Assembly (NCBI RefSeq): GCF_000002075.1 | Contig: NW_004798595.1 | Coordinates: 18,822-82,821 of the forward strand | Reading direction: 5' to 3' | DNA length: 64,000 nt | Source: Aplysia californica | Lineage: Eukaryota | In this document: piece by piece, positions 1,339 to 48,151 of the stretch | Numbering within the stretch: position 1 is the stretch's first letter | Layout: every line of letters begins with the position of its first letter | Notes under the pieces: generated by a model | Databases searched by the model: none | Seen by the model: only the letters and a program-made list of their open reading frames with translations | Told to the model about the DNA's origin: nothing | Position numbers and translations under genes: made by a program

Positions 1339-4300
1339 ATGAAGACAATTGTCACTGAGGTACTGTCTAATTGTCTAATTGCTTCACTGAGGAAAAGTTT
1401 TATTGGGTACTGAGGAGAGGACGAGTGTGTTTTGTTGTCAGTTGGTGTTGTGTCTGCTTTGCTTTGACTTCTGACTGTCAACTTTGACTAGATCTAGATC
1501 TAGATCTAGATCTATACTTTGTGACAAAAGTTCTAGATCATTGCCTTTTTATCAACTAGCCTCTGATGAGACAACATTAGTTAGCCTACATGCGACTTGT
1601 AAAGTTAACTGGCGGTCCTATTGAGTCTTGGTCTTTCAGGGGGCCCCCGTCCAGGATCGATGTTGTCGTTCTCTCGTCCTGTGCTTGACTGACTCTCCTT
1701 GTGTGTCTCTCAGAAGACGTCGGCCTCATTCCCGCTTTTCAATGTCACGTGATCCAAAGGGCGCGCTACTCCCTTAACTAAACTATACATGATTCTGTCC
1801 CATAATAATAATAATCATGTCCCCTGACCTCACAGCGACTAAATTATGTAGAACGACACAAACTATTTTTAGGTAAGGCGGCCATCTTGTATGACGTCAG
1901 ACCAGGATACCCCTCCGATCACGTGACACCATGATCTAAACATAGCGAACCACATGGCATGAAAGATTGTGTTTACCTACCATGGCACAATGTTTGGTGC
2001 GATGTTTTTCCAGGAGATGTACCAGGAAGCGGTCTTCCATCACCAGAGCGTGGCTGACATGCTGCAGTTAGCCGCAAGTGTGAAATTTTTTCTTGCGAAA
2101 CACATCAATACGGATTTATATATATATGTCAAGCCACTGACCCAACTTGTCGTTCCCTGCGATATCCCCAGAGATCGTGTAGTGTGTACATGTAGTGTAG
2201 TGTTTAGTAGAGAATCTTTGGTATTTCTGCGTTCTTTTAAAATAGCCTGTGGGTATCCCAGGATGTGATGACGTCACATTACTAAAATAAGCAACCAATA
2301 TGAGGCAGGTGCGTCGTTCTACGCTTAGCAGCATATAGTTAGCCTCTATACTTTAAATAGTTTGAAGTTCATCAATTGTTAATCTAGATCTCTATAAATA
2401 TAATTTGTACAATTATTGGAGCTTTTTCGATAGTTCCTACTACCCTTATTTTGGCATATTTTATTTGAAATTTTCAAAATTGAGCTCGATTTACTATTCG
2501 AGTAGTAGGTCTAGGTAAAAATATTTGAGGTAATCGATTTGTCAAAATTACATAATTAACACTTTGCAGTCACACAGCCAGCAGTGCAAAATACCCCGTT
2601 TTGTCACCTAGCCAGGAGAGCGACTGCAACAGACTTCTCGGACAGGAACAGATAATTTTCACCGGCGCTGTATTGCGCCAAGTGACTGCAGAGTGTTAAA
2701 AAAAAACACTACACCTACCTAGGCTTAGGTCTGGTGTTGTTAATTGCAATCATGAAGTGCGTCTGGGAAATTGACTGTCATCCAAACTTTCGCCATTGTT
2801 GTTTTGGTCAGAATTGGAAGGTACAATTTGGCCAACTATTCTTTAATAACATTATTGCCAATTTGGAAAGGGAATGAACCATTTTCTGTGCCATTAACTG
2901 TTACAAAGAAGCGTTTAAGTCAAGCAATTTTCATTCATGTATAGTATATATATATGGCTCTTTTCGTCTATTAGATGCAGACCGTCAATTTAGCTAAGCT
3001 TAAGATGGTCTCAAGGTTTTCTTCATGCAGCTTCTTTTATGGCTAATTCTTCCTATATGTTTGAAGCGCAGATTCTGTCGCATGTATAGTACTGAAGGAG
3101 ATTCATAAGTCGAAATCTCTTCAAATATTCGATCTAGGCCGATATCAGTAAATTTTTGACTCGACTATATTCCTAAAACAGGAAAATAGGCGCATAATAA
3201 TTGGGGGGTGGAACTACCGAAAAAGGGCCCCATTATTATAATATAATTATTACACAGCAGCTGTAATTGTCACAGTGAATGAAGCGCAGGTGGTTTGAGG
3301 GTGCTCTGGTGTGGTTTGACCGTTTTTCTTTTCAAAAGGTGCTTGAGGTGCTTGTTTATTGTTCATTGTATTCCAATTTCTCATCTGAAGGCCAAGAGTG
3401 AGGCAATCTTATGTGCTTTTGATCTATGTCCAGTCCAGACTAAAAAGTGGATATTCTTTGAAATTTAGTGCTTAGGCATGGGGCAATTGTGGTCTGCTTT
3501 GATAAATGAAGTGCTTATGACTTATGCAAGGCATACCTTGCCTTTGACATTTTACGCTTGTGAGTGTGGTAATGAAGATGACATTTATAATATCTCTGTG
3601 CAACAGACATTTACTGTTATATATTCTTGTCCTCAGATTGAACAACTTGAGACAGAGATTTCCAAGAGTGAGTCTCGCCTGGATGATATTGAGAGGTTGG
3701 GAAGACTTGCAGACATGACAGATGAAGAATGGTAAGTATGGTCAGTATAACACAGGTAGGTCGAACACAGCAGACTTGAACTCACACTTCCGTCAAACTG
3801 CTTGCGGTCCCGGTTTTTTCTTCTTCTTTATCTTTGTAAGAAAATTACGCGAAGCTTGAACTCAAACACGGAATGGCCAAACTAATTGCACCGCCGTATA
3901 GGTCTAGAGTCAATGTCCTTTTAGGGACACTTGAGACAAAATAATAATGATTAAAAAAATTTTAAAGCAGAAAAAAGCAACGAATGTCAGTAAAACACCA
4001 CCTTCCCCCCTCCACAGAAGCAGCTAGCTGTGTTACTTTTAGCGCGCTGGAGCCACGCTGCTTGACACGCGTGTCTAGGCCTAGCTAGGCTTGTGTGGAG
4101 AGGAGAAGGGTTGTGCATCACATGATCGGCCACCCACCCCTCTTCGCAAAGGACTGCAAGCTTGATGGGAGAGGAGGGGTAGGGCTGCATTGCTTTGTCA
4201 TCGCGTTAGTGATTACTGTTGCGATATGTCCAATCAAATTGTTTATATTTTGAAAATTTTGAAAACCCACTGTTTGATTTGTGTAGACTAAAGACTGTTC

Positions 4301-7300
4301 ACACCGATCTGCGCTATCAACCTGTCTTGGTACCTGTAGGCTCATTACCGATCGAACTCGAAAGCGTTGCTCATCATTGATTGCCCCTAAAGTAGCAATC
4401 TTTGTTGCTTCAAGTGCTTCCCTTGATTCTCTGACACAGCCAATGCCATAACACAGTTCATGTATCCCTCCAACTACGGATCCCTCAAACTACCGAGACC
4501 AGTCCTGATGAGTTCTAGCTATCTGAGTTATAGTTATACTGTATTTGAAAATGTAAAAATGGTTGTTATCCATGCATTTTCCGAGTTGCAATAGATGACA
4601 GGCAGACGGGGGTGGTCGCTTGGAAAACTGCGTGGATGAGCGCTCTTCCGCAAGGAAAATAAGGGATCTTGGCCGACGCACCAAGGGAAGAATCTACGGT
4701 GACCAATGTTAAGGCCCACAACCGGTAAAATGGTCTCACTTCACTCTGAAAGGAACTGACGTGACCATTAGGTGGGTTTATGACATATGGTGAGCAAAGA
4801 GTGGTCCACCTTTATTGCTAGTCACAGTGGCATGAGGCATACCATTTTCACCCATCATCCTTTCATGAGTCTCAAGATCAACACTTGTCCAGTTGCCCCT
4901 CCCCTTTACCTGTCCAAAATTTATAGCTTACCATCTATGACTGAGTTCCCCCCACCTTTGTCATTACGTATATTTTTACGTTGTGACCACACCACGAATT
5001 GAAATTCAGTCTGTCTCGCAAATTCGGGAGTAGAGACAGCAACTGCTGCCATCGTCAGGGAAGCGTTCACAGTTGGGTGTGATCCCACCAGGAGCGAACT
5101 TGTAGGCCTTTCCCGCCTAGTGAGTGATGTAAAAAATTTACGTGGAGAGCTCAGATGCGAGTGCTATGTGTGGGGAAAACTAATGTGTCGGTGAGTTCAC
5201 ACATCGGTGTGATCCCATCTGGGCAAACATTGTACTCTTTCATTGAGTTTTACAATCCTAATGTGATCACTTTCACAAGAGTGGCTGATCTTTGATTCGC
5301 CCGCCAGTTCAATGATCTCAACCTATACTATCACTCTTGGTTGATCCGCTGTGCCTGCCCGGGTTTTGTTCCATAAATTATTATCTGAAATGCGGGATCT
5401 TAACTGAATGTAGACCTTCAGAGTGGATCAGAGCGGGATCTGAGGGGTGACTGTTATAATAAATAAAAATTCTGTTTTCTTAAAACAAAGGGATCTTAAG
5501 GCTTAAGGGAAGCAGGATCGTAAGCGGTGGGATCTTTGGCGGAGACTACTGTATTTTTTTAAATTGAGGTTAGAGCATCTCGCACGAAAAGTGTCTATTT
5601 ACTGGTGAAGTAGCTTCTATTAGTTCTATGGCTGTGGCGACCAGCCATGGTGCGTGTAATTGAATTAATTGTGCACTTTACTTATTTGTTTATGCCTTGT
5701 GTGTGTGTTTAATTGCCAAATTTACTAAAAAGGAGGTCTTTTTTTTTTCAGGAGCAGACTAAAAGTGGAAAAGACCCAGCTTGAACACCAGTTAGTTACA
5801 AATCGTAAGTAATTTCTGTCAGCTAAATCTGTTCTGAACTTGAAACAGAAAAGGTTAAATTATCACACAAATTGTTCCACAAGCGGACTCTGCACTTATT
5901 GGCCTCATTCTTCCAGCATGCCTTTGATTATATTAAAGCGATGGGGGAAAAACAATTTACAGTTGTTTTACATGTTGATGGGATAAATATTTTCCAATTT
6001 CCATTCCACAAAGATTTGTATGCAATGTGAAAGCATTGTCAAAAGTCAACTGCTACAGATACTGTTGAGTGGTTGATAAAAAGTCCTCAGGAATTTTTTT
6101 TCATATTTCTTAATGTGTGAGATAATGAAATGACGAATATCATCTTTTGGCATTACAACATATTCCTGCTGCTCTTCAATATGTGTTTCCCTTCATTTCA
6201 TGCAAATGTCCTCCCAAATAAGCCAGCTCAGCAAAAGTATTTACTTTCAGCTTAAGAAAATTGGCAGTGTAAGAAATTATTTAACTAAAGNNNNNNNNNN
6301 NNNNNNNNNNNNNNNNNNNNNNNNNNNNNNNNNNNNNNNNNNNNNNNNNNNNNNNNNNNNNNNNNNNNNNNNNNNNNNNNNNNNNNNNNNNNNNNNNNNN
6401 NNNNNNNNNNNNNNNNNNNNNNNNNNNNNNNNNNNNNNNNNNNNNNNNNNNNNNNNNNNNNNNNNNNNNNNNNNNNNNNNNNNNNNNNNNNNNNNNNNNN
6501 NNNNNNNNNNNNNNNNNNNNNNNNNNNNNNNNNNNNNNNNNNNNNNNNNNNNNNNNNNNNNNNNNNNNNNNNNNNNNNNNNNNNNNNNNNNNNNNNNNNN
6601 NNNNNNNNNNNNNNNNNNNNNNNNNNNNNNNNNNNNNNNNNNNNNNNNNNNNNNNNNNNNNNNNNNNNNNNNNNNNNNNNNNNNNNNNNNNNNNNNNNNN
6701 NNNNNNNNNNNNNNNNNNNNNNNNNNNNNNNNNNNNNNNNNNNNNNNNNNNNNNNNNNNNNNNNNNNNNNNNNNNNNNNNNNNNNNNNNNNNNNNNNNNN
6801 NNNNNNNNNNNNNNNNNNNNNNNNNNNNNNNNNNNNNNNNNNNNNNNNNNNNNNNNNNNNNNNNNNNNNNNNNNNNNNNNNNNNNNNNNNNNNNNNNNNN
6901 NNNNNNNNNNNNNNNNNNNNNNNNNNNNNNNNNNNNNNNNNNNNNNNNNNNNNNNNNNNNNNNNNNNNNNNNNNNNNNNNNNNNNNNNNNNNNNNNNNNN
7001 NNNNNNNNNNNNNNNNNNNNNNNNNNNNNNNNNNNNNNNNNNNNNNNNNNNNNNNNNNNNNNNNNNNNNNNNNNNNNNNNNNNNNNNNNNNNNNNNNNNN
7101 NNNNNNNNNNNNNNNNNNNNNNNNNNNNNNNNNNNNNNNNNNNNNNNNNATTGTAATACGCATTGAGCATCTTTTAGGAAATGGAAATGCGCAGTATAAA
7201 TGCTATTTATTATTATTATTATTATTTACTTCCTGAAGCCAGGTAAAATCACCTAACATGAAGTGGGCGAGCATACGACTGGTGAATCTCCCATAAGTAA

Positions 7301-8135: not shown

Positions 8136-11100
8136 AGTCATGAGAGATAGCCATTGTTCATTTTAGTCTTTTTGCACGGTTTAATGCAAATTTATTTGTA
8201 AACTAAAGCCCATACCTCATGGTACCAATTGTTACTGTACACATGGCCTCTTCCCCCCCCCCCCCCCCCCACCCACCCATTTTGTGTTTCTTTTGGTCCA
8301 AATTCTTAATATTATAATGAGAACCAAGGTTCATATTAGTACAGCAACAGAACTATTTGTCCAAATAGCATTTGAGTTTGAATGACACCTACCTATAAGT
8401 AAGATGTCTTTGAAGTCAAGTCCAAAATGCATTCCTTTGGTTCCTACCCATGCCTTGCTTGAGTGATAAAACACTATGGACAATATCAAGATGTCTGTGG
8501 CTCAGAGTCAAAGGCTTATATTATCAGCATCATTCCACAAGACATGGGAGGGGGGGGGGGGGGGGGGGTTCGGTTCAGTTTTGAGAGAATTAAAGAAAAA
8601 GAGAGGGCATAAATCAGAATCATGGCTTGGGCACTCATCTGTTAATGGTAAAAACTGGCTACCTCAGAATTACAAAGTTCTATCTACTTAATACCTAGTT
8701 TTGAGAATATTTGACGTTAAAAAATTTGAGTTTCACAATATATCAAGCTTTTTCTAATGAAATTCTTTGAATTTGAATATCTTGATAACGACTCTGAATA
8801 TTTTTACTATTTTGATAAAGCAGATAGAACATTTGGTTTCTGACCTCATATTCTTAGTAGTTCTAACTGAAAACGGCCAAAAATGCCAGATAGGACTTTT
8901 TAATTCTGAGGTGGCGAACAAGGAAAGAAATAGCGTTACAAAACAAAACTATTGCAAGATGTCCCTTACCTTGATCATGTCTTTGTTCAAATAATGACTT
9001 TATCTGGACACCCCAGAGATTGATTTGGGTGATTCTGTTATGATGCTGATGATACAATGCTTATAAAAAGAATCCTCATATGACCTCACGGTGAATCATC
9101 TCCTGTGATCGGAAGAAAACTTCATTACCCTTTTTTTAATGACTCAAATTCGTAGTGTTGAAATGCTCAACATCTCTTTGACCATCAGCAATGTCAAAAT
9201 GAAATTTGAACTGCTAAATTTATATGTTTTGTGACAGTGACACTTTGTTGATGATGATTAGATCTTGGGCTTGGGTTTTTATAATATTTTACTGTTTGAG
9301 ATGAATAAATGATATATGAAATAAAACAAAAGGTATTGTTTTGATATTTATACATATTATATTTATTACATTTCTTTTCACAGTTAAAGCAAAACAAGAT
9401 ATTTGCAAAAATTGACAAAAGCATGACAGTGTAGCATGGACAAAACCAGTCATCAGTTAATTATAACCCTGTCCGTACGTTGAGATGGAAAAGCCAGCTT
9501 CCTCTGGAAGCCAAATCTCAAAAAAGGACTCGAACTCAGGACCTCTGCTTCATCATAGGTACCCATATATATAAATCGAAATTCATTAATGACATACATT
9601 TACGCAAATGACCAAAGTAATTTCACACTATCATTCCTTTAAATTGGGGGGGAAGTCATTTCGTCTTTGAGAGATTAGAAATAACTTGCTTTCTATGACA
9701 AAGAGAAAGGCTAAACTAAAATACACAAGTGTTGTTGATGTGTGCAAGATGTTTGTTTAGGCTCAGCATGTGCCAGGGTCCAGAGAGAGCGGGTGGGTGG
9801 CCAGCACACGTATGATCATATGAGAGCACGCTGTCTGAGTTCGGGGGGGGGGCACGATTTTGTGATGAATACAGCAATGCATCCAGCTCTGACAATTACG
9901 AAGGCTGTGATAAGACTAAATATGAGCAGCTATGGACAAAGAAAAATGTGAACTGAAACCACAATGAACACCTTACATGCTGATGAAGTCCTTAAGTTCA
10001 GGTTCATATGGAAAAAACAACACAACGTGGAGCTTATGGAAAACTGATCAAGTTTGTGTTAATGTTAGTATTGTTCATGGGATTTGCCAAGGTTAGGGAA
10101 GCAACTGCTTTATATAAGCAAGCATTTTGAGGCACCGATGCTTCTATCCCTTTTTATTTAAGCCATGACACGATCAGAACAGATGTTCCTATTACCGTTA
10201 TAACCGTTAAATAATTCTCCTATTAGTAACACATTTTTTTATAAATGGGAGGTTTGGCCCAAAGACTTAACGATAACTGAGTTTTGCTGAATCAAAAGAA
10301 ACCACAACAGTGGTGATGAAACTTGTAGTACTGATGAGAATCTTATTGTGCTGTTTTAGACTAGAATGTGAAGCGTGCTGACAAAATGAGTTACTTCTTG
10401 GATTTGAGACCTATAGAAATAGATACATCACGCTTGTAGGTGATGTATTTACAATTTATAAGTATGAAATAATAAAAGGCATGTTGTACTTTAAGAATAT
10501 GGCATTAATAGAAAATCTACACTTAATTTGACCCTAGTGTCGATTTTTGGCCAATACATTGTATCTCCATTTCTGGATTACGAGAAGCAACTCATTCTGT
10601 CAGCACGCCTCACATATAGTGCTGGTGGCCACCGTCGCATATTCAGACAGTCGGACTACGAGGACAAAACGTAATACCTCGACCCAAACAAAACTGATCT
10701 ATAGCTCTACCGACATGGTCCCGTCACCCTCCTAGATGTATCTCTATAAAAGACTGTATTGGGTGTCATGGGATGAATAGCTCTCTTCCTCTGCACAACA
10801 AGTCTACCCATTTGACTACTTCTCAACACTTCTGTCGGAGTTATTCTTGGAACATGTTGCTGATGCAGAAAGTGAAAATCCCAAAAGACTGAGATGTCAG
10901 GCAGAGCTATGAAAACTTGATTTGGGTGTTTAAGGTGCAAAATCATCATGAGCTAAGTGAGCAAGTGCTTTCTGGAGCACCTTCAGTCATAAATGGCTGT
11001 CATTAATCATTAAAAGTGTTTATACATGGCAACTTTTTGTGACAGACATTGACTATTGACAATTCAATTCTGGCACATTGGCATTATGACAAAGAATTAC

Positions 11101-11922
11101 ATTACAGTTATTCAGTTAGCAAAATAATAAATATTGCTATTTGATGTTAAACTTTATTCATTTCTGTACACAGTGGAGTAATTCGTTTTAGCATAGGTGT
11201 CCTGGGATATTTTTACAGGGTGTCCAGCGAAGTCGGATTTTGGTCGGATATTTCAATCAAAGTCGGAAAAGTTGGATTTTGGTCGGAATCTTAAATGAAA
11301 GTTGGATTTTAGGGGAAAAGGAATCCCTATCAGCAGAAAATGTAAAAAAAAAAAAGACAAAAAAAGAAAGAAATCGAAGGGGAAAAGTCCAAAGTCCAGC
11401 TCAAAACGACTCAGGGCCTACACCAAGTTTTTCCCCAATAGTTTACAGTAGGTCTAGTATGATACTGTGTTGCTTGCAAGACTTTTGTTGTTGGCAGGGA
11501 GCGTTATAGATTGTGGACAAAAATCTTGCGAGTCTCGCAAGTGGCTTTTAGAAATTAGACCGCCCTGTTAGTTATTACTTGTCTGAACGCACCTCTCTAC
11601 CGAGATCTTGCGTGTGTTACGAGACAGGAAGCGAGAGAGAAGAGAAAGGAAGAAGAAAGAAGCAATGTTTGAGTGTCTTCATTCTCAATGCGATAGTTTG
11701 GTGGTGAATAGCACAGATTCTTCATGGAAAATAAGAATTTTCTACAATATTGATCAGTTATTTCAGTCAATGTTTCCCGATTCCAACATAGCACAGAGAT
11801 TTCAGTGTGAAAAAACAAAGGTGGGATACCTCTATCTACATTTGGAATTACACAGGCTATTAAGGAGAGCATCATGGCAGCAGTTAAGGATTGTCAGTAT
11901 TATGTACTGATGTTTGATGAAA

Positions 11923-13252
11923 GGGAGTGCTTATTTAGGCCACATATGGCCTAAATAAGGTAAAGGGGGGGGGGGGGGGTTTAGCTTATTTGGGCCACAG
12001 GTGGCCTAAATAAGGTAAAGGAGGGGGGTTTAGCTTATTTAGGCCACACATTCTCAAACTACCCTTTTCAGGCAACTGAGTTCGTTCCACTTTCGTAATA
12101 GTGCACCTTTCTCATTTAGTACAGTTTTGTCTCTAGTGTACAACTTAAAATCATAACATAATGAAAATTGTAAGAACAAAGCACAATTAATTTAATACGC
12201 AAAAATTTGCTTTATCCCAGTGGTTGGAATGAGGCCAGATTTTTTCCTCATGGAAGGGCAAAAGCTAGGCTACCATTTTGGCACACTTTGGTCAAGTGAA
12301 CAAATTAGCCTTATGGTCAAAACCTCGGAATGGACTTCCGGGTCAAATTTGGTGTGCAATATTATAAAAATCGTAGTACACAACGTGCCCGAGGGCACTC
12401 TCTCAAAACAATGCACTATGCACCCGCCGGCGATTGAGAGACTGGTCGAGGGTGCCGTATTCAGCACCTTTGCTGAATTCACAGAGTTGTTCGACAAATA
12501 TAAATCAGACACAAATAGTGTATTTGTTTCCAAGCATGCAACAAAAGTCTCTTCGGCAAACAAGAGGGTAATGACTGCCGAAAAAAAATATCGAGATGAA
12601 TGGGTGTACAGGAGCATCCAGTTCCAGTGCAAGCATTTTGGTGACTATGAATCCCAAAGCAAGGGTTCCAGACCTAATCAAGCGTAAGTTTGAATCAACT
12701 AGTTGTAGATCTAGATCTAGATCTAGCTCCTAGATCTACCATTTTTTCTACCTAGATCTAGAATCTAGATCTACCATTTTTTCATTAATTGATATGAAAG
12801 TGGCTATTCTCACGGGCCCGGAAGTTCTCGCAAGATCAACTCCTCCCCTCTTCTCTCTCTCTCTGTCTCTTTCTGAATACTGTCTATCAGTGTGGACGAT
12901 CAAATTGACCAAAACAAAGTTTAAAAATGATGTTAAAAAACAAAAGTAAATTAATTTGGTTGTCTACAAAGATGCTACGGCTATTTAACTTTTCGAATCG
13001 AGCCGAACTACGCGGGTCGCCATTTTGTTTTGCCTGGAAGTTCTCGCGCTACTCCTCTCTCTCTCTCTCTCTCTCCACACAGGTGTGGCCTAAATAAGGT
13101 AAAGGAGGGGGGGTTAGCTTATTTAGGCCACAGGTGTGGCCTAAATAAGGTAAAGGGGGGGGTTTTAGCTTATTTCGGCCATATGTGGCCCAAATAAGGT
13201 CACCCCCCCCTTTACCTTATTTAGGCCATATGTGGCCCAAATAAGGTCACCC
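11923..13252 (+). mobile_element. Internally deleted MULE/Mutator element
   Basis: 9-bp TSD TTGATGAAA (11914-11922, 13253-13261) and GGG...CCC termini built from hairpin repeats. The ORF at ~12418-12683 encodes a ZSWIM3/FAR1-like N-terminal domain (F..F..F...CKHFG...KGSRPNQ) and ends at a GTAAGT donor. Confidence 0.82.
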
Positions 13253-14017
13253 TTGATGAAAGACTCAACTCAAATCTTCAGTCCAAGCAGCTTGATGTCC
13301 ATCTTCGCTACCTAGATTTTTATCGATGGCCATTCACTCCTCCACATTGGATCTTGTGGCCTTCATACACTCTGCAGTCTCCATCTGCATCAGACTGTCA
13401 GCATCACAATGGACAATTGTAATGTAATGAGAGGTCAGGTAAATGGAGTCGAGGCCAAGCTGCGAAAAGAAAACCCTCATCTCCAGAATGTCAGTGGAGA
13501 TACCATACACATGGTGAACATTGCCACAAGAAAACAGTTTCAATTTATGGAAAGTGACTTCCTACCCCTTCAAACTCTGTGTAGTGATCTGTACATGGAT
13601 ATTGAGGAATCTCCAAAGGCAATAGCATTATTCAGCACAATCCAGGAAGCCCTTTAAGGGAAGACGAGGACGGTTTTGCGACCCATCCCAACAAGTTTCA
13701 ACCAGATGCTGGATGTGGTTGACAGATTGTTACTTCTATGGGACGGCCTCTTCATTTTCTAGACCCCATTTCTGGAAAAGAGTGAACAGGCAGCTGCAAA
13801 TAAGAGAGTTCACGGCATTTTGAGTGACAGAGAGATACTGGATGAGGGCAAAGAAAAAGTCAAGACTGCGCTTAACCAGATGAGAAAGCAGAACTAGACA
13901 GGGGGCCGGTAAGGAAAGAAAACAAAGTATATTGCTGTATTTGCACAAAAAGGAGCCTAAAACACTGCGGCAAAGGCAGGCAGTTGGAACATTAACTATT
14001 GGCTGTAGCATAATAAT

Positions 14018-14400
14018 ATGAACAAAATAAAAACACACATGGGATCTTCTTCAACTAAAAACCCTTCCCCAACTCCCAACTTTGTAAAAAAGTCTCGGCT
14101 CGCAGAAGCGGGTGCGGCTGCCGAGCCGAGCAAACCCAACCAAAATGGAAAAAGGACCTTTTCGGCTGCCACTGTCCTACCCCCTCTCAGGGAGCTTCCG
14201 CGGCAGCTGTACTTGACCATACGCAACGATGCGCATAAAAAGATCACAGATCTAAACCTTTTAAAAACAGGAGATGCACTACGACAAGTTCTGGGATACA
14301 TTCCTATGAATGTCCAGAAACTGTCCTCTGGTGCATTCCTCATCAAGTGCGCATCGGATAAAGAACTGGCCGGACTTGAGAAGACCACCCGCCATCGAGC
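14018..14400 (+). mobile_element. LINE ORF1 (gag-like, I/Jockey-group) N-terminal fragment
   Basis: LYLTIRND...LNLLKTGDALRQVLGYIPMNVQKLSSGAFLIKCASDKE resembles the RRM-like ORF1 pattern (VKKLRSGxLLIEC). Confidence 0.65.
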
Positions 14401-14429
14401 CCAACAAGGGGGCACATTGCTCGGATGAC

Positions 14430-14882
14430 CAGAGCTGTGCCAGGGCTACCCTGGAGCTATACTCTTCACGAGAGTGCACGAAACCCTCTGGTGCACGAAA
14501 CCCCACAAAACATGGCAAGAAACCTTATCAAACAGAGTAGAGGCTCTCAGGAATCGCCATAGGCGGATTGCTGAAAGACTGTCGGCTCACACCCATGTCT
14601 AAGTTACCCCCTCTAGCAGTCGGAGACTGTATTCGTATACAAAACCAAACTGGACCCCACCCAACCGAGTGGGACAAAACCCGACTTTTCCTTGAAGCTC
14701 GTCCATTCGACCAGTACAAGGTAAGAGTGGACAGATCAGGCAGAGTGACATTGCGCAACAGGAAATTCCTTCGTCGATATGTACCAGTGATTCCCAGATC
14801 CCCACTGGCCACATTACCCTCACCTACAGCCATGGTGACAAAGAGCATACCCACATGCCCTGAACCAGCCAATGTTCCCTAA
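14430..14882 (+). mobile_element. Gypsy LTR-retrotransposon pol fragment (integrase C-terminus)
   Basis: LPPLAVGDCIRIQNQTGPHPTEWDKT...FDQYKVRVDRSGRVTLRNRKFLRRY is a typical Gypsy integrase C-terminal SH3-like module. Confidence 0.8.
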
Positions 14883-15189
14883 AGTCAATGTCACAATCAT
14901 TCCATCCTCTTTCAATCCTCCTACTCCTCACTCGCACCCCCCCCCCCCCTTTCGCGGGGTCAAACACACACTTTTATTCGAGGCATACAAAAATCCTTTT
15001 TTAAATTGAACTCACATACTAATGGGGGGGGGGGGGGGTATCACCCCTACTAATGGGAGGAGGGGGGGGGGGGATTAACACCCCTACTAATAGGACAGAA
15101 ATATGGCTACAAAAAGATTTGGCTCCAAATTATCTCCCAAATTGTTGGTAGTCTGGCCCCACACTAAAAATATATCTGACAACCCTGTT

Positions 15190-16760
15190 CATTGTTCTCT
15201 TTCACTATTGAGTCGCTGAGATAACCCCAGCAGTCAGCAGCAATCAGATAAAGTAGAACGGAACCAGCCGAGCTTGATATCAGTGACCCTTCTGTCATGT
15301 CACAGTTTATTCGTGGCAGTATTGCCACATCTCCTGGTGAACTTTGTGGGGACGGGAGTGAAGATGAGTCGTTTCCAACAAGTACACCAAGTCAAGCGAA
15401 GGAAGATGAAGAGGGTGAAAGTACCGTTGAAACTGAAAAGTAAAGTAAGTATCACTGGAATGGGCCTTCTGCCACTTTCTGACATCCAAGAATACTGGTG
15501 CACTGATGCCATTTACAACTTCTCCTTCTTCGCTAGTGTGATGACAAGAGACAGATTTTTAAACCTTATTACTTGTTTACATTTAAACAACAACAAAAAC
15601 TTTGTAGCAAAAGAAGTCGACCACAACCCTTTGTTCTCTTTCACTATTGAGTCGCTGAGATAACCCAAGCAGTCAGCAGCGATCAGATAAAGTAGAACGG
15701 AACCAGCCGAGCTTGATATCAGTGACCCTTCTGTCATGTCACAGTTTATTCGTGGCAGTATTGCCACATCTCCTGGTGAACTTTGTGGGGACGGGAGTGA
15801 AGATGAGTCGTTTCCAACAAGTACACCAAGTCAAGCGAAGGAAGATGAAGAGGGTGAAAGTACCGTTGAAACTGAAAAGTAAAGTAAGTATCACTGGAAT
15901 GGGCCTTCTGCCACTTTCTGACATCCAAGAATACTGGTGCACTGATGCCATTTACAACTTCTCCTTCTTCGCTAGTGTGATGACAAGAGACAGATTTTTA
16001 AACCTTATTACTTGTTTACATTTAAACAACAACAAAAACTTTGTAGCAAAAGAAGTCGACCACAACCCTTTGTTCTCTTTCACTATTGAGTCGCTGAGAT
16101 AACCCAAGCAGTCAGCAGCGATCAGATAAAGTAGAACGGAACCAGCCGAGCTTGATATCAGTGACCCTTCTGTCATGTCACAGTTTATTCGTGGCAGTAT
16201 TGCCACATCTCCTGGTGAACTTTGTGGGGACGGGAGTGAAGATGAGTCGTTTCCAACAAGTACACCAAGTCAAGCGAAGGAAGATGAAGAGGGTGAAAGT
16301 ACCGTTGAAACTGAAAAGTAAAGTAAGTATCACTGGAATGGGCCTTCTGCCACTTTCTGACATCCAAGAATACTGGTGCACTGATGCCATTTACAACTTC
16401 TCCTTCTTCGCTAGTGTGATGACAAGAGACAGATTTTTAAACCTTATTACTTGTTTACATTTAAACAACAACAAAAACTTTGTAGCAAAAGAAGAAGTCG
16501 ACCACAACCCTTTGTTCTCTTTCACTATTGAGTCGCTGAGATAACCCAAGCAGTCAGCAGCGATCAGATAAAGTAGAATGGAACCAGCCGAGCTTGATAT
16601 CAGTGACCCTTCTGTCATGTCACAGTTTATTCATGGCAGTATCACGACATCTCTTGGTGAACTTTGTGGGGACGGGAGTGAAGATGAGTCGTTTCCAACA
16701 AGTACACCAAGTCAAGCGAAGGAAGATGAAGAGGGTGAAAGTACCGTTGAAACTGAAACA
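15190..16760 (+). repeat. Tandem repeat, unit 439-442 bp, about 3.5 copies, derived from piggyBac transposase
   Basis: Near-identical units. ORF starts at 15274, 15713, 16152 and 16594 give spacings of 439, 439 and 442. Confidence 0.95.
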
Positions 16761-19700
16761 ACCAATAGCGGCGCAGGGGAGTAGAGAGAGGGAGATGCTG
16801 ACCTTAGTCCCCCATCCTTCGAGCCTGTCAAGCAGCCTGGCCGACAAGTTGAGATGTGAGACGGAGCGACACCACTTGACTTCCTCAAGCTCTTCGTGTC
16901 TGTGGGTATGATGACACATATTACTACAGAAACAAACCGCTACACCGCACAGTGCCTCCAGTCAACTGGACCATCAAGGGGCCACCTTGCGACCAGGACT
17001 GATACCAACGAAAAGGAGATGTGGGCCTTTTTTGGCCTATTATCACTGGAATGGGCCTTCTGCCACTTTCTGACATCCAAGAATACTGGTGCACTGATGC
17101 CATTTACAACTTGCCCTTCTTCGCAAGTGGGATGACAAGAGACAGATTTTTAAACCTTCTTACTTGTTTACATTTAAACAACAACAAAAACTTTGTTGCA
17201 AGAGAAGTCGACCACGACCCTTTGTTCAAAATTAGCCCCTACCTGAACAGCCTGGCAGAGACCTTCACCGAAAATTACTATCCAACGGCCAACGTTGCTA
17301 TCAACGAAGCCATGGTCGCATGGAGAGGCAATCTCAGCTTCCATGTGTACAACTGTGGCCTTTATGATAGCACATGGCCTTACACACTGCACCACGCCGA
17401 CAAGTGACGTCATCAGGCTGCGGCTGACGGGTGACATGCCGCAGGATTTCTTAGCGTGTAGTGTGTCGGCCACAAAGTGCAGTGCCTTTGATCCTAAAAA
17501 TTATGACAGTAGTGTGACCAATGAACGTGTATCAGTGATTACATTTCCATCAGACCCAGATTGGAGAAGGCTTTGGCAACAATACCAAGGAAAGATTTTA
17601 TTCCTACTAAGCAGTCTGTTGTCTGTGCAAAACATTTCACCGAGGAATGTATCTTGCGTGTTGATTCTTTCACCTGAGCAGGTAAGTAAAGAAAAATAGA
17701 GATCTCAACCTTAGTATTTCAAACTGGAGTCCAATTCAAATACATGTACCTTGACTAACATCTGGAGAGCTGCTGGTGCCCTAGATTTTTAAGTTTAAAT
17801 ATCCATCTAGATATCTAGATGTATATAATAAGCAACTCTGTGGCTTCAGCTATCATGTTTCAATCCAGTAATTGCTTGAGAGTGAGAAGAAATTAAAATT
17901 ATTGTCTGTCCTCAAGCCAAGCTGGTTTCTGCATCACAGGATACCATCCAGCTGAAGGAAGTCACGGAACCCCATGAAGACAGAAGGTTTTCTTTAATAA
18001 CTGCTGCAGAGGACGAATACAAGAGCTTTTATCCCTTTTCTGAGTGATTGTGAAACGATGCAAGTGACAGAGGAGCAGACAAAAGCTTTAGTCTTTGTGT
18101 CGGGATATTCAACAGCAACGGTGTTGCGACACACTACATGCGATGGGTGTTGATTTGAATTTAGCCTTGATAAAACACTGAGAGCTGAGGGTGCAGAGGG
18201 CAGCTGCACATACATCTCTGTGTCGGACAAGGGTGGCTTCACTTGGCCTTGTGACCGCTACATTGACATTGCAACGGAAATTTTCAAAGTTTTTCAAGTG
18301 CTCGTGAGAGACACCCAATGTGAACAACAGTTTCTTGCTTGTAAAAACCACAGAAAGACCATCATGAACTTGGCAATGCAACGACTGTATGATCTTGGAC
18401 TTGATTCCGGAGTATGCAATGAATGCAATACATCTTTTAAAGATCCAGTGTTGAAGTGCAGAAAGCCATTGGTTAACATTTTCCAGAACAATTACTCAGG
18501 AAACTTCAGTGACAAAACGTCTGCGACAAACTCGTCAAGAAAAATAAAAACCCTCAGGAAAAGATTATCACTGTACAAGAGATTCTGAAACACATTAAGG
18601 TAGGATTTTTGTGTATGTGCCTCGTTCCCTCTTCATTTTGGTGTTGTTGTTGTTTGGGGGGGGGGGGGGGGTGAGACATTGTTTTATTCTGTATGCCCTA
18701 CTTCCACGTCCCGTCTCTTGGTTGCTGTCGTTGTTATTAGAATAATAATTGTTTTTGTTGTAATTGTCATTGCTTATGTTGCAATTCTTATCCCTGTCAA
18801 ACACCATCGTCCACGGTACAACTCATACAAGCCGGACAAATTTTGAGTTACCATCTTCCAGCTGTGCGACTCTAGGAACGTTTACTGCTGCAGGTTTGAG
18901 GTCTGCACTGGAAAGAAGAAAGCCTCTTCCAAGGGAACAGTTGACGACGTCATGATGAGTGTGCCATCTCCCTACCTGGGGTGTGGACATCGACTATACA
19001 TCGACAATTTCTACACTGCCCCAGTCCTCCTGATAGACCTACTTCCCCACAAGACAACAGCGAGCGTGCGGGACGGTCAGGCTCAACAGGAAGGGACTGT
19101 CGAAGGAGATGGCGGGGAAGAAGGTGTTGAAGAAGAAGGGAAAAGTAAAGCTAATGACAACGGGAACGATGAATCATATCAAGTTCATGGATCGACGCGA
19201 GGTCAACATCTTGACATCCATCCACTCTGGTGGCAGGATGAGCGACACGGGACGGGCAGACAGAGCCATTGGGGAGCAGATCATCAAGTTCGATGCGGGG
19301 AAGGACTAGGACAGGTTTATGGGAGCTGTCGACTGGTCGGAACAGATGGTCTTATATACAACTCTTCGAAGCGGAAGACACTGAAGTGGTGGAAGAAGGG
19401 TTTTTTTTTCCCACTTCGTTATGATAGCAGAGCTCAACGCCTGCTGTAAAAGGAGTCGACTGAAAAGCCCATCAGTCACCGTATGTTGAGACGTGAGCTG
19501 GCCAAGGAGATGGCGAGACAGTTTATCCCTCAAAAGCCTTCAAGACGCACCAGCCTCCGGCTGGGAGATTTTTCACTGCATGGACTTACAGCCAGGCACT
19601 TCTCCAGTGGAGTCCCTCGTCGTGCTGGCACCGTGGAACAACCAGGGAAAAAGGTCAGACCTGCCACTCAACTCTGCGGTGTTTGCACTACCAACACTGG

Positions 19701-19983
19701 AAAGAGGAAAACTCCGAGTGACGGTCGGAAGAGGAAGGAATTGACAGCTGAGTGCATCCACTGCAATGTAGGCCTCTGCCTCGTGCCATGCGTGGAGCTG
19801 TACCACTCACAGAAGGACTACAAGAAGGCCTACTGCAGACTCCAGGGCACTGACGGCTCAGCTGAAACCTCCCCACCCAGTTCCTCTTCAGACTAAGCCA
19901 ACTGTTCCGGACAATGAACTGTCCTTTTTACGACAACCCCCCCAAGGAAGTCGGAAGAACTTGGCCTCATCGTTGCTTAGGGA
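16578..19983 (+). mobile_element. Decayed piggyBac (PGBD4-like) transposon, interrupted by a P element
   Basis: Acidic N-terminus, MTRDRF, VAINEAMVAWRGNLSF (first catalytic D is N), LYIDNFYT, MGAVD, KRKTLKWWKK, and a C-terminal Cys-rich domain CGVC...CIHCNVGLCLVPCVELYH. The end is ...CTTAGGGA|TTAA (19984-19987). Frameshifts and stops are present. Confidence 0.9.
17354..18815 (+). mobile_element. Internally deleted P-element/THAP9-like transposon
   Basis: Direct repeat GTACAAC(T) at 17347 and 18816 (7-8-bp TSD), after which the piggyBac frame resumes (YNSYKPDKF). THAP finger CSAF...FPSDPDWRRLW...VCAKHF and P-type C-terminus LVFVSGY...CDGC, DKGGFTWP...NIFQNNY. Confidence 0.8.
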
Positions 19984-20732
19984 TTAACATTCACATCTGA
20001 AATGCACGGATGGCCAACCACAGTACTACGTTTTTTTAAAAAGTTATACTTTTTTGCTACTGAAATGAATGAAGACTGTTATTTCAGATTCTTTGGATGA
20101 AAGTTAAGCTTTGGTAATTATTTAGTGCAGTTACAAGTTTAAAAAGAAGGAGAAAGAAAGAAGAAAAGAGGTGGGTTTTACTGTTAGTACTGTAATTTCT
20201 TTTTTTAAAGCAAAAAAACAGAAAAAAAAGAGGTGAGAACTTTGAGAGCTTTCCCTTTCTTTTTTTTTTTTTAAGTAGTACTGTGGTTAACGCTCTTTCG
20301 GTGAACTCCGCAAGACCAGAGTTGAATGGAGAAAAGCTGCATATTTCAACCACAAGGACAATTTTAAGTTGAAGATTAAGTCTTTATCATTATGTGGTTG
20401 TTGTTTTTGTAATGTTTTGTGTCAAATTTTATGTGCAGGGTAGTGGTAGGATTTTTTTTTGATAAAGTAGGATTTTTTTAATTTGGGAAATTGCTGGACA
20501 CCCTGTTTTTAGAAGTGCACACTACTACGTGAAAAAAAAAAACCCTACTCATTTCCCTTTGCGTGGTCCTGAAGCAGTTTCACGGTAGAACCTGTAGTAC
20601 TGAGTGAGTTTTAAAAAAATCCACCATTTTGTCCCTTTGAGGTCTAAAAATTTGGGACCCACAGAGGGCAGTTATTATACAAATTGAGTAGAATAAGAGT
20701 TATGGACTACTGGACTACAACTGCTACAAGGG

Positions 20733-23700
20733 TCAACTGCTCTGTTGTTGTAGCCTCATCTGTTGGCGAGTGTACTCCCAGACTATCAGGGCTCCGCAAA
20801 CATGGACATTGAGGGACCGGATGATGCCCAATTGTGGGATTTCCACGCACACATCTAGCAACTGGATTATGTCCACTGGGATGCCTTCCTTCTCATTTCT
20901 GCAAAGCAAAAGGACACATTAACAGTGTTTAAGTTACACAAAGTGTTGAATTGTGTGCCCATTCTATTTCCCACTTGTTCCTATTAATAATAGACTAGTA
21001 GTCAATCGCAGAGGCTAAAGATGCCAAAATGTGACATCAATTTGATCTTAAAACAATTTCCTGATCTTACAAAATTGGTTTAGGAAACAATGTTCTTTGA
21101 GCAAAAACTTACAAGGCTGACAGTTAATTTCCTCATCAGAGAAGTGGGGGTGGGGAAGTCAAGGAGGAAAATGAAAAAATGTCTGGTTTCAGTCCTGTTC
21201 TTCTGCCTCTTGAAATCATTGTTGAATCATAACATAAACCCTTCAAATAAATAATATCTCACGACCGTCCCTATGTTTGAAACAACAAACAGAAATAAAA
21301 TTATATGTGACCCGAATACCAAATGTCTATTATATTATCACACACATATATAAATATATTTCTCAGCTTGGGTTAACCCCAGATAAGCAGGGTCAAGGCA
21401 GCCTGCCTCCCAAAGTATCTAAATCATATCATATGGATTAACATCATCATTGCCTTTCTCAACTTGGACCAGGTTCTTAGTGTTAAGATGGAGGAATTGT
21501 AAAGTAAGTGCCTAGAGCTGTATTGTTTGGGCATGGGTGCTATAGAAATTACCTGCATTATTATTTATATTATTTTTTAAAATTATAGATCACTGACAAA
21601 CATTTTCCATTTAGGATAGCTTCTAAACATTATTCCATGAGTGGAAGAGAGCTGTTTCGTTTTGTTATGTGTTTTACCGCTCGCAACTGCATAAGTCTAT
21701 ATGAGAATGGGGGACACATTAAACATTTTCAGTTGGTAGGAAATTTTGAACTTTGCCCGGGAGGCGGCCGAAGCCTACTGGAAGAGTGTATTAAAAATAA
21801 TGTTTATTATTATTGCATTGAAAAAATAGCAATATGTTAGACATCAGGTCTAAACGAGTCAGAAGCACAAGAAAACATACCCGAGAAGTAGCAGAGTCTT
21901 CTTTGGGAACTGGTACTCCTCCAGGGAGACACTGTTGGCGGTTTGTTCAACACCGACCAGGGTGTACCCCGCAAGTCTCTTCTCTTCCAGAAACTCAATA
22001 AGGCGAGGACGCATCACCTGAAATTTGGCAGAAAATATTGTATTAACACATTACACCCTAACTCGCCCGGGATCGCCCGAGAATTCCCTTACGCGCTCCA
22101 CTCTGACTCGCCCGGAACCGCCCGCGCCGACCCAGCGTCTTTAGAAACGAAAGTCTCGCCTTGACGAGACTCTGGGGCCGGGATTTTGATTTGCATAGTA
22201 TAGCAAAAAGTTTCTTCTTTCGTTTGATACCGAAACGAAATTTAGTATTAGAGCTGATCGAAGTGCGATCGTGTTACCGACACTTCGAAAGTGTCTCGAC
22301 TTGTTGAAAAGCGACACAATTGAGTTCGAAAACGGAAATAACGATGGATTTGAGCAAAAACGAGCATGTGACAAATCAGATGGCTCAGATTTTGATGAAA
22401 ACGTTGTAGGAAGAGTTTGGGGCGATTCCGATTGATCAGACGGAGAAAATCTAGAATTTAGATCTAGGGCCCGACCGCGAGGCTGAGAGTGAGAGTGACT
22501 GGTCGGACACCCCGATTGAAATAAAGTTAGAACATTTCCAACAGTTTGTGCATACATAAAGTTATATTTTTCTGAAACTACATTCAGTTTTCTTTTTAAC
22601 TTTTATTTTTTCAGGATTTTTGGAATTTGTTTAGTATTTTTTTAATGTGTTTTTTAAAGGCTTGTATTCACGGGAGGTGGGTTCCTTCCCCTTGCTTAGG
22701 ATCTAACAATGGACTCCCCATCCAGGCCCTTAGGGTGTAATGTGTTAAGGAGGATATTTTTCACAGGCATTGTGCAGTCAAAAGACCATACATGAGACTA
22801 CACCAGTGTCCTTGCAGCAAGAAAGTCAGGTAAAAGTGAGGTATAGTCATAAATGTCGAACTGCTTGACCTAGTGAGGAACATCCAGAGTCACTATGGGG
22901 ATCAGTCAAGTTGCTTCTTCTATGGCTTACAGGAACAGGAAACACCCAGGTGTGACCTGTGTGATGTGAGAAGATAAGTAACAGAGTGGCCTCAAATAGG
23001 ATACTCCATAGAACAGAAGTTCTGGAAAAGTGGCACCTCTGTAAACTCAGTTGGGTCTGGGGTACTTTTTTTTAGAAATACATGCACTTGAGTCTGAACA
23101 TTTTAGGGGGCTTATAAAAATGTTTACAAGTCCAAACAGAACAGTAATAAAATAAACAGAAGAAATTCTTGATCTGAGGGTAATTGGAAAAAAAAAAACA
23201 ACTCAACTCACTTCACACTCTACAAGTTTTCAGAAACAGCCATGTAGTTACTTTTCGAGTGAAATAAAAAGCAGGGTTCATCAATGGACAGAGGAAAGTC
23301 GTAAGTCTTCTTTGTCCATTTTGTCTTCAGGCTGACTTACACAGACGTCTTGTGAGTAAGAAATAGACTGCCACATAAATCTACTAATACTCATACTTCC
23401 TGCTCTTGCACTATAAGATCAATATCTACAAGTCTTTTTTTCTCTATTTAATGCCACATGTCTATGAAACAGATTGCTGTGACATATCCTACAACTTGAT
23501 GAAGCATTAGCAGTTCTGTCTTTTTAATATATGCAACAAAGGGTGTCGGATTGGACATAGGCCCTCAGCCAGACTTCCCACAACAGATTCCAGAAAAAAA
23601 CTCATGTGAGGTTAACTATTTTTAATTTCAACTGTAGGCCTATGCTTTTTCTTTTCCAATCAGCACATGTTCTTACCTCAGTTATGTTAATCCACTTCTG

Positions 23701-47978: not shown

Positions 47979-48151
47979 TGTAATAGTGTATGACAGGTGA
48001 TGTCCTTTTCTTTTCAGTTAAATTAGGTCATTCAGTTCACTGTCAGCCTGCATAGGGAAAAAAACAAACAAACATGATCACTCTTAATCATTAAGTAGGT
48101 GCTTGAAAGCAAGAAGAACATATAAGAGACTTAGTGAGCACATATTTTTAA

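What the first reader, a model, noticed from the sequence alone, without database searches (positions are those of the whole stretch)
11216..20505. Six TE superfamilies stacked in one orientation, antisense to TARBP1: possible 3'-UTR piRNA/TE-trap locus
Seen: the hAT, MULE, LINE ORF1, Gypsy integrase, piggyBac and P/THAP coding remnants are all on the + strand within 9.3 kb, starting 228 bp past the TARBP1 stop codon on the - strand. Known: uni-strand piRNA clusters (flamenco-type) and genic 3'-UTR piRNA sources consist of nested TE fragments antisense to the transcript. Inference: TARBP1 read-through would give one RNA antisense to six TE families. Six co-oriented pieces have about a 1/32 chance if independent, so this is suggestive only.
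Basis: partly seen in the sequence, partly recalled or inferred. Interest (0 to 1): 0.8.

Follow-up and report, generated by a model that had tools for sequence, protein, structure and literature searches.

The report
Dead transposon nest behind TARBP1
Just behind the TARBP1 gene lies one dead hAT-type transposon stuffed with broken pieces of five other mobile elements that all point the same way; it is transcribed weakly, but nothing yet shows that it makes piRNAs, so for now it is an ordinary transposon pile in a suggestive place.

Summary
TARBP1 ends at 20733-20735 on the minus strand. From 228 bp further on, 11216-20505 carries plus-strand coding remnants of hAT, MULE, a LINE gag-like ORF1, an LTR-retroelement integrase, piggyBac and a P/THAP element.

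It is not a stack of six separate hits. It is one hAT5/hAT6-type element with perfect 13-bp inverted ends, a TTTTTA duplication and paralogous empty sites. The other pieces are nested or spliced inside it. One short LINE 5'UTR piece lies on the minus strand.

The insertion moved the likely old AATAAA signal (11153-11158, minus) 9.3 kb away from the stop codon.

RNA evidence is thin. One RNA run that holds a spliced TARBP1 contig covers the nest at about exon depth. Three stranded poly(A) runs give only a handful of minus-strand reads in the nest. No small-RNA data could be examined.

Six of six co-oriented (about 1/32) is weak after so many windows. My genome-wide control was blocked.

Verdict: an ordinary nested transposon pile in a gene tail, with probable low-level run-on transcription. 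The piRNA-source reading is untested, at about 0.2. The scan has flagged similar gene-tail nests elsewhere in this genome.

The parts
20736..20898 (-). Last coding exon of TARBP1 (SpoU-type methyltransferase C-terminus). The stop codon TGA lies at 20733-20735.
   Evidence: ORF. PDB 2HA8 match, E 3.7e-21. Spliced contig joint 20898|21881 with GT..AG on the minus strand.
20506..20732 (-). 3'UTR stub between the stop codon and the nest. 20506-20511 TTTTTA is the right copy of the target-site duplication. 20517-20605 is a small piggyBac-like MITE remnant.
   Evidence: Sequence. Motif hits. Minus-strand poly(A) reads at depth about 1-1.6 and X5 depth 6.4.
11216..20505 (+). Outer hAT5/hAT6-type element, internally deleted and filled with other TEs. 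Perfect 13-bp TIRs at 11216-11228 (CAGGGTGTCCAGC) and 20493-20505. Flanked by TTTTTA at 11210-11215 and 20506-20511.
   Evidence: The same TIR and subterminal AAGTCGGA repeats occur in the C73 relative. Both flanks are contiguous, about 48 nt apart, in paralogous repeat copies on C146 and C410, which act as empty sites.
11746..11920 (+). hAT transposase remnant, 5' part (QYYVLMFDE...), interrupted by the MULE.
   Evidence: tblastx and blastn to the C73 relative. The relative carries zf-BED, E 1.1e-5.
11924..13252 (+). Non-autonomous MULE with long palindrome-rich TIRs. A clean insertion with the 10-bp TSD TTGATGAAAG at 11914-11923 and 13253-13262. Young: two other copies are 97-98% identical.
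   Evidence: a single copy of the TSD in the C73 hAT relative. ZSWIM3_N hit on plus at 12196-12684. More than 3000 first-look candidates in the genome.
13255..13372 (+). hAT transposase remnant continuing after the MULE. 13373-14025 is single-copy and is probably more hAT interior.
14026..14388 (+). 5' part of the gag-like ORF1 of a high-copy LINE-like family. It lacks the rest of the element.
   Evidence: 512 first-look candidates at 84-88% identity. Copies stay conserved for more than 1 kb and carry a 334-aa ORF with CCHC knuckles. The Atlas gives neighbours with zf-CCHC / PRE_C2HC gag-like features. tblastn.
14385..14488 (-). Piece of the same LINE's 5'UTR, inverted relative to its position in all other copies. 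It is the only piece on the minus strand.
14465..14879 (+). Internal fragment (C-terminal part) of an LTR-retroelement integrase, with no LTR. 14880-15187 beyond it is single-copy.
   Evidence: tblastn. DNA matches at 88-89% to C169, C66 and C866. The relative has Integrase_H2C2, a weak rve hit and 175-bp direct repeats..
15188..20286 (+). 5'-truncated, frameshifted piggyBac. The 3' TIR ...GTAGTACTGTGG is followed by TTAA at 20287-20290. About 950 bp of the 5' end is missing relative to the C139 copy.
   Evidence: DDE_Tnp_1_7 hits. Copies on C139 and C432 at 85-86% identity. TIR motif.
15192..16758 (+). Tandem array of 439 bp x 3.6 copies at 99% identity, built from a deleted piece of the piggyBac 5' coding region.
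   Evidence: The unit ORF hits DDE_Tnp_1_7.
17355..18815 (+). Internally deleted P-type (THAP) element inserted into the piggyBac ORF, with the 8-bp TSD GTACAACT at 17347-17354 and 18816-18823.
   Evidence: Absent from the C139 piggyBac copy, which has the site once. The longer relative on C314 has THAP (E 1.9e-15) and TNP-like_RNaseH_N (E 2.8e-12). tblastn.
20477..20482 (-). ATTAAA on the minus strand, 24 nt inside the nest. It is a possible substitute poly(A) signal.
   Evidence: Reads still cover 20462-20480 and the 20340-20516 bin.
11153..11158 (-). AATAAA on the minus strand, 58 nt beyond the nest's left end. It is the likely pre-insertion TARBP1 poly(A) signal, giving a UTR of about 300 nt without the nest.
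   Evidence: This is an inference; no 3'-end reads were laid here.

Best explanation
A single hAT5/hAT6-type DNA transposon landed in the old 3'UTR of TARBP1, between the stop codon and the original AATAAA. That UTR is itself an old repeat.

The element is dead. Its middle has been replaced or expanded by other mobile DNA:
- a young MULE, a clean insertion with a 10-bp duplication;
- a 5'-truncated piggyBac that carries a P-element insertion (8-bp duplication) and a 439-bp tandem array;
- short internal fragments of a LINE and of an LTR retroelement, joined at irregular junctions.

All coding remnants happen to face the same way, antisense to TARBP1.

Shown: the anatomy, the three empty sites, and the decay of every ORF. 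Inferred: TARBP1 transcripts now either stop at cryptic signals in the hAT end or run on at low level into the nest, giving weak minus-strand RNA. The locus has no demonstrated function. The co-orientation is within reach of chance, or reflects a shared history of the pieces.
For: - TIRs and the TTTTTA duplication.
- The flanks are contiguous in paralogues on C146 and C410.
- The hAT relative carries zf-BED and the same TIR, with a 5-bp TSD. hAT families with 5- and 6-bp TSDs are described in the literature (PMC12730594).
- MULE and P empty sites are seen in relatives.
- piggyBac Pfam hits lie in several frames.
- The mosaic junctions are unique in the genome. Every other LINE copy has the 5'UTR piece the other way round, and no second copy of the hAT ends or of 13373-14025 or 14880-15187 was found.
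- The minus strand of the nest holds 10 AATAAA/ATTAAA signals against 3 on the plus strand, so it is not shaped for long read-through.
- In three poly(A) RNA runs the nest has a depth of 0-0.8, against about 1-1.6 in the UTR stub.
- In two other loci a neighbouring RT-like ORF, judged by eye, faces away from the piggyBac or P copy.
Against: - Six recognisable TE coding remnants sit in 9.3 kb, while the 32 longest other ORFs of the window gave no TE domain and my TE proteins hit nowhere else in it. This clustering is not expected from uniform insertion and needs either a pre-assembled composite or preferential retention.
- RNA run X5 covers the nest at a mean depth of about 5, similar to the exons (3.9-8.2), while the intron reads 0.
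- About a dozen runs with transcriptome-sized contig sets, from at least 5 studies, hold 18-60% of the words of 16800-20950.
- Other notes of this scan report many same-strand nests behind genes in this genome.
Confidence: 0.55

Rival explanations
1. Read-through or long-3'UTR piRNA source. RNA polymerase runs on from TARBP1 through the nest. The resulting minus-strand RNA, antisense to six TE families, is processed into piRNAs. New insertions that add antisense TE sequence are retained, so the locus acts as a trap.
For: - The TE coding remnants are antisense to the upstream gene, 6 of 6.
- The insertion lies between the stop codon and the old poly(A) signal.
- X5, which is RNA because it holds a spliced contig, covers the nest at about exon depth.
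- The few stranded reads in the nest are mostly on the minus strand.
- TE coding remnants cluster strongly in the nest compared with the rest of the window.
- Read-through-driven clusters behind conserved genes are documented in mosquitoes (bioRxiv 10.1101/2022.08.22.504762).
- Molluscs express PIWI proteins and piRNAs ubiquitously (PMC6128900).
- Similar nests have been noted elsewhere in this genome.
Against: - No small-RNA data were seen.
- At 9.3 kb the locus is small for a cluster.
- There are many minus-strand poly(A) signals inside it.
- The poly(A) RNA signal in the nest is only a few reads.
- Contigs cannot give the strand or show continuity with TARBP1.
- The pieces may have arrived together, in which case only one orientation event relates to TARBP1.
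Confidence: 0.22
2. Pre-assembled composite. The hAT picked up its load elsewhere, by nested insertions in a TE-rich region or by template switching during gap repair after excision. It then transposed once, as a 9.3-kb unit, into the TARBP1 tail. Its orientation relative to TARBP1 is then a single coin flip.
For: - The TIRs are intact and the TSD is perfect.
- All TE coding remnants of the 64-kb window lie inside this one unit.
- The LINE and integrase pieces are internal fragments without their own ends. The piggyBac lacks its 5' end and the hAT middle is missing. Irregular junctions of this kind are typical of repair filler.
- A closely related hAT family with the same terminal 60 nt is young, with copies 97-99% alike, so transposase may have been available.
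Against: - No second copy of any composite junction or of the hAT ends was found in the genome.
- The MULE is much younger than the rest (97-98% identical to its kin, against 85-88% for the others), so at least that event may be in situ.
- This reading does not by itself explain why the five inner pieces agree with the hAT.
Confidence: 0.13
3. Orientation filtering by selection. Insertions in the gene tail survive only if they are antisense, because sense-oriented TEs bring poly(A) or splice signals that damage TARBP1 3'-end formation.
For: An antisense bias of TEs inside transcription units is well known in animals (general knowledge). The nest lies inside the old 3'UTR.
Against: - The minus strand of the nest carries more poly(A) hexamers than the plus strand, 10 against 3.
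- DNA-transposon fragments with dead ORFs carry few directional signals.
- The nested pieces sit inside already dead TE sequence.
Confidence: 0.1

Closest known systems
Read-through-driven core piRNA clusters of mosquitoes (Qu et al., bioRxiv 10.1101/2022.08.22.504762)
   Same: A block of antisense mobile or viral fragments lies directly downstream of a conserved, expressed gene and has no obvious promoter of its own. The proposed precursor is made by transcriptional read-through.
   Different: In mosquitoes, small RNAs, chromatin state and biogenesis factors were measured. Here none were. This block is 9.3 kb, sits inside one transposon, and is made mostly of DNA transposons.
Uni-strand piRNA clusters of the flamenco type, and genic 3'UTR piRNA sources (general knowledge)
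   Same: Nested, dead TE fragments with a strong strand bias, antisense to the presumed direction of transcription. The position is in a gene tail.
   Different: flamenco spans hundreds of kb and has its own promoter. 3'UTR piRNAs are defined by small RNAs, which are not available here.
hAT5 / hAT6 groups of hAT transposons (Kapitonov and Jurka 2007, as cited in PMC12730594), and internally deleted, filler-bearing non-autonomous hAT elements such as Ds
   Same: The TIR begins CAGGG, there are subterminal short repeats, the relative carries a BED finger, and the target duplication is 5-6 bp. The middle is deleted and replaced by foreign DNA.
   Different: No hAT dimerisation domain was detected, the family is essentially single-copy here, and the 'filler' is unusually large at about 7 kb.
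Ordinary nested TE piles ('graveyards') in animal genomes
   Same: TEs are inserted into TEs with clean target duplications, plus truncations and tandem duplication. All ORFs are broken.
   Different: The position lies exactly between a stop codon and its poly(A) signal, and all six coding remnants share one strand.

Membership tests
uni-strand / read-through piRNA cluster | Dense, nested, decayed TE fragments | tested here: met
   Six superfamily remnants in 9.3 kb, all with broken frames.
uni-strand / read-through piRNA cluster | TE fragments predominantly antisense to the direction of transcription | tested here: met
   6 of 6 coding remnants are on the plus strand and TARBP1 is on the minus strand. 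One non-coding LINE piece is on the minus strand. The statistics are weak (1/32).
uni-strand / read-through piRNA cluster | One long single-strand precursor transcript across the locus, continuous with the upstream gene | tested here: inconclusive
   X5 contigs cover 16800-20162 at a mean depth of about 5, the intron reads 0, and a spliced TARBP1 contig is present. Stranded poly(A) runs give only a few minus-strand reads in the nest.
uni-strand / read-through piRNA cluster | Abundant, uniquely mapping 24-31-nt small RNAs with 1U bias, and PIWI dependence | not testable with these tools
hAT superfamily | Short TIRs beginning YARNG, with subterminal repeats | tested here: met
   CAGGGTGTCCAGC matches 13/13 at the two ends, with AAGTCGGA-type repeats.
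hAT superfamily | 8-bp target-site duplication | tested here: not met
   TTTTTA (6 bp, or 5 bp plus one extra T) here, and TTGAG (5 bp) in the C73 relative. hAT5 and hAT6 groups with 5- and 6-bp TSDs are recognised within hAT (PMC12730594).
hAT superfamily | BED finger plus DDE transposase with a hAT dimerisation domain | tested here: inconclusive
   zf-BED, E 1.1e-5, in the relative. No Pfam hit for the core or the dimerisation domain in the window or the relative.
piggyBac | DDE_Tnp_1_7 transposase and TTAA target | tested here: met
   E 3.4e-20 and further hits. The 3' TIR is followed by TTAA at 20287-20290. The 5' end is absent.
P element (THAP9-like) | THAP domain plus RNase-H-like transposase, with a 7-8-bp TSD | tested here: met
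   Pfam hits in the C314 relative. The window pieces align at 74-89%. The 8-bp TSD is GTACAACT.
MULE / Mutator | 9-10-bp TSD, long TIRs, Mutator-type transposase | tested here: met
   10-bp TSD TTGATGAAAG and TIRs of 52 nt or more starting GG. The only coding evidence is a ZSWIM3_N hit, E 1.1e-8. No MULE DDE domain was seen.
LINE (non-LTR) ORF1 | Gag-like ORF1 with CCHC knuckles upstream of an endonuclease/RT ORF2 | tested here: inconclusive
   High copy number, a 334-aa ORF with CCHC knuckles, and Atlas neighbours that are 'Gag-like' with PRE_C2HC. ORF2 was not reached in the loci held, and Pfam gave no hit.
Ty3/Gypsy LTR retrotransposon | Integrase with H2C2 and rve inside an LTR-bounded element with Gypsy-type RT | tested here: inconclusive
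   H2C2 E 2.3e-11; rve E 1.5e-4, below the Pfam cut-off; 175-bp direct repeats in the C169 relative. No RT was seen, so the superfamily is not fixed.

The most novel reading that the evidence does not exclude
The TARBP1 tail nest is one of many co-oriented transposon traps that sit directly behind housekeeping genes in the sea hare. These traps are transcribed by read-through and processed into antisense piRNAs. That would mean the mosquito-type 'read-through cluster' mechanism also operates in molluscs, here seeded by a single hAT insertion between a stop codon and its poly(A) signal.
Probability: 0.15. Interest if true: 0.6.

Novelty: already known. Interest (0 to 1): 0.3.

Why it matters
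As it stands, this is a well-resolved example of how one transposon insertion can push a gene's poly(A) signal 9 kb away and then fill up with other elements.

It would matter more if small-RNA data showed minus-strand piRNAs. Together with the other gene-tail nests noted in this genome, that would extend read-through-driven piRNA clusters from mosquitoes to molluscs. Those animals have abundant somatic and neuronal piRNAs, and the origin of their clusters is poorly described.

Tried and rejected
1. Genome-wide control for co-orientation. I planned to take 10 kb upstream of 35 5'-intact LINE copies and count same-strand against opposite-strand TE ORFs. This was not tried by any other route.

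2. In-window control. The 32 longest ORFs outside the nest gave no TE domain, and my TE proteins hit only the nest. No orientation count is therefore possible in the TARBP1 introns.

3. The look-up of encoding contigs with a nest ORF found nothing on record.

4. The Aplysia neuronal piRNA paper (Rajasethupathy et al. 2012) is not held. The mollusc piRNA paper PMC6128900 says nothing about this locus.

5. High RNA depth at 21579-22100 and 20163-20339 was rejected as TARBP1 signal. Almost all those reads fit only in part. They come from a short repeat and from A/T runs.

6. I tested whether the minus strand is cleared of poly(A) signals. It is not: 10 signals against 3 on the plus strand.

7. 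Extra copies of the composite were not found.

Full report
**Setting.** The window belongs to a 927-Mb assembly in 4332 contigs. Earlier notes of this scan name it as the sea hare Aplysia californica; I did not verify the species independently. TARBP1 runs on the minus strand. Its last exon is 20736-20898. The best solved relative is human TARBP1, PDB 2HA8, at E 3.7e-21. An RNA contig joins 21881 to 20898 across a GT..AG intron. The stop codon TGA is at 20733-20735.

**The outer element.**
- Positions 11216-11228 (CAGGGTGTCCAGC) and 20493-20505 are a perfect 13-bp inverted repeat. Each is flanked by TTTTTA.
- A 70%-identical relative on contig C73 has the same terminus and the same AAGTCGGA-type subterminal repeats. 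It has a 5-bp duplication (TTGAG) and a plus-strand ORF set that begins with a BED zinc finger.
- The two flanks of the nest belong to one older repeat. In its copies on C146 and C410 the sequences homologous to 10913-11213 and 20551-20610 lie about 48 nt apart, as in the window once the nest is removed. These copies serve as empty sites.
- The whole 9,290 bp therefore entered, or grew from, one insertion. A 5-6-bp duplication is not the hAT norm of 8 bp. However, hAT5 and hAT6 groups with exactly these lengths are recognised (PMC12730594).

**What is inside, left to right.**
- hAT coding remnants lie at 11746-11920 and 13255-13372 (plus strand).
- They are split by a 1,329-bp non-autonomous MULE at 11924-13252. 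It has long TIRs and the 10-bp duplication TTGATGAAAG, which the C73 relative has only once. Its plus-strand ORF hits ZSWIM3_N at E 1.1e-8. The family has thousands of short copies and two long copies at 97-98% identity, so this insertion is young.
- 13373-14025 is single-copy.
- 14026-14388 is the start of the gag-like ORF1 of a family with more than 500 copies. It is directly followed by 104 bp of the same family's 5'UTR in inverted orientation (14385-14488). This is the one minus-strand piece.
- About 14465-14879 is the C-terminal part of a retroviral-type integrase. Its relatives are small LTR-bounded elements with Integrase_H2C2 and a weak rve hit.
- 14880-15187 is single-copy.
- 15188-20286 is a piggyBac. 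It has a 3' TIR followed by TTAA at 20287-20290, several frameshifts and no 5' end.
- The first part of the piggyBac is blown up into a 439-bp x 3.6 tandem array.
- The piggyBac ORF is split by a 1,461-bp internally deleted P-type element at 17355-18815, with the 8-bp duplication GTACAACT. A longer relative of this element carries THAP and TNP-like_RNaseH_N.
- 20291-20505 is the hAT 3' end.

**Is the co-orientation more than chance?**
- All six coding remnants are on the plus strand. With the inverted LINE piece the count is 6 of 7.
- The probabilities are 1/32 and 0.125. These are unremarkable for a pattern picked out of a very large scan.
- The events are not clearly independent with respect to TARBP1. 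Only three are clean insertions with their own duplications: hAT, MULE and P. The LINE, integrase and piggyBac parts are fragments at irregular junctions. They could be repair filler or leftovers of deletions, and they may have been on board before the hAT reached this site.
- What stands out more is clustering. The 32 longest ORFs elsewhere in the window have no TE domain, and my TE proteins hit only the nest. Either the unit was assembled elsewhere, or insertions are kept preferentially inside it.
- No second copy of any junction exists in the assembly.
- As anecdotes, in two other loci a neighbouring RT-like ORF (judged by eye, not scanned against Pfam) faces away from the piggyBac or P copy.

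**Transcription.**
- Without the nest, an AATAAA on the minus strand at 11153-11158 would lie about 290 nt behind the stop codon. It is the likely original signal. The nest now separates the two.
- The first signal met by the polymerase is ATTAAA at 20477-20482, 24 nt inside the hAT end. The minus strand of the nest holds ten such hexamers against three on the plus strand.
- Three stranded poly(A) runs of organism A give about 1-1.6-fold depth on the minus strand over 20340-20870. They give only a few reads, mostly minus, at 18570-19454, and nothing elsewhere in 16800-20160. TARBP1 itself is barely expressed in these runs, so power is low.
- Run X5 (organism B) holds a spliced TARBP1 contig, so it contains RNA. 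It covers 16800-20162 with contigs 97-100% identical to the window, at a mean depth of about 5. The exon and UTR stub read 3.9-8.2 and intron bins 21048-21578 read 0. Family copies elsewhere are only 85-90% identical, so this signal is local.
- About a dozen runs from at least five studies have contig totals of transcriptome size, yet hold 18-60% of the stretch's words. This is more than a random 5-15% sample of the genome would hold.
- Together this suggests low-level transcription of the nest, probably on the minus strand. Strand, continuity with TARBP1 and the left half of the nest (11.2-16.8 kb) remain unshown.

**Interpretation.** The best-supported reading is an ordinary, dead, nested transposon pile that happens to sit in a gene tail and is weakly transcribed, most simply by run-on from TARBP1. 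Its defining feature, small RNAs, could not be examined. I put it at about 0.2. The same kind of nest has been flagged several times elsewhere in this genome by this scan. One follow-up there reached the same 'real but unproven' verdict, and another claimed a genome-wide rule. Neither claim was checked here.

Noticed in passing
window 15192-16758: A 439-bp tandem array (3.6 copies, 99% alike) is built from an internally deleted piece of the piggyBac 5' coding region. The native, undeleted version follows at 16512-17227. The duplication is very recent compared with the 85% identity between piggyBac copies.
   Followed up: partly
window 20018-20286; L041 (C139) 4485-4714; L044 (C432) 6336-6572: The last roughly 240 bp of the piggyBac lie between inverted 12-mers CCACAGTACTAC. 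They are flipped in the window relative to two other copies, which looks like an inversion by recombination between the inverted repeats.
   Followed up: partly
window 10913-11213 and 20551-20610; L049 (C146), L050 (C410): The TARBP1 3'UTR is itself an old repeat, 68-78% identical to two other loci, including the region of the presumed poly(A) signal. A piggyBac-like TIR pair at 20517-20528 and 20594-20605 suggests a MITE remnant.
   Followed up: partly
window 21711-21779 and 22044-22100 (TARBP1 intron/exon border): Short stretches are matched by hundreds of poly(A) RNA reads, almost all on one strand, that run on into unrelated sequence on both sides. This points to a highly expressed short repeat or a fragment of another gene, not TARBP1 expression.
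   Followed up: no
L008, L009, L010 (C406, C236, C31), position 1501 onward: A hAT-like family with the same 13-bp terminus as the outer element has copies 97-99% identical to one another over at least 1.5 kb. It was probably active recently.
   Followed up: no
window 11959-11975, 14937-14950, 15024-15038, 15062-15074, 18656-18671: G or C homopolymer runs of 12-16 nt recur at or near element borders inside the nest. Two of them form a weak inverted pair (14928-14948 and 18656-18676). Their meaning is unknown.
   Followed up: no
L045 (C169) 3883-6555: A small 2.7-kb LTR-bounded element carries only a gag-like ORF and an integrase, with no protease or RT seen. The internal deletion is shared by copies on C66 and C866, so this is a propagating non-autonomous LTR element.
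   Followed up: no
window 46779-48017 (minus): A 413-aa open frame on the TARBP1 strand has no Pfam hit. It is probably a large TARBP1 exon from the HEAT-like part, but this was not checked.
   Followed up: no
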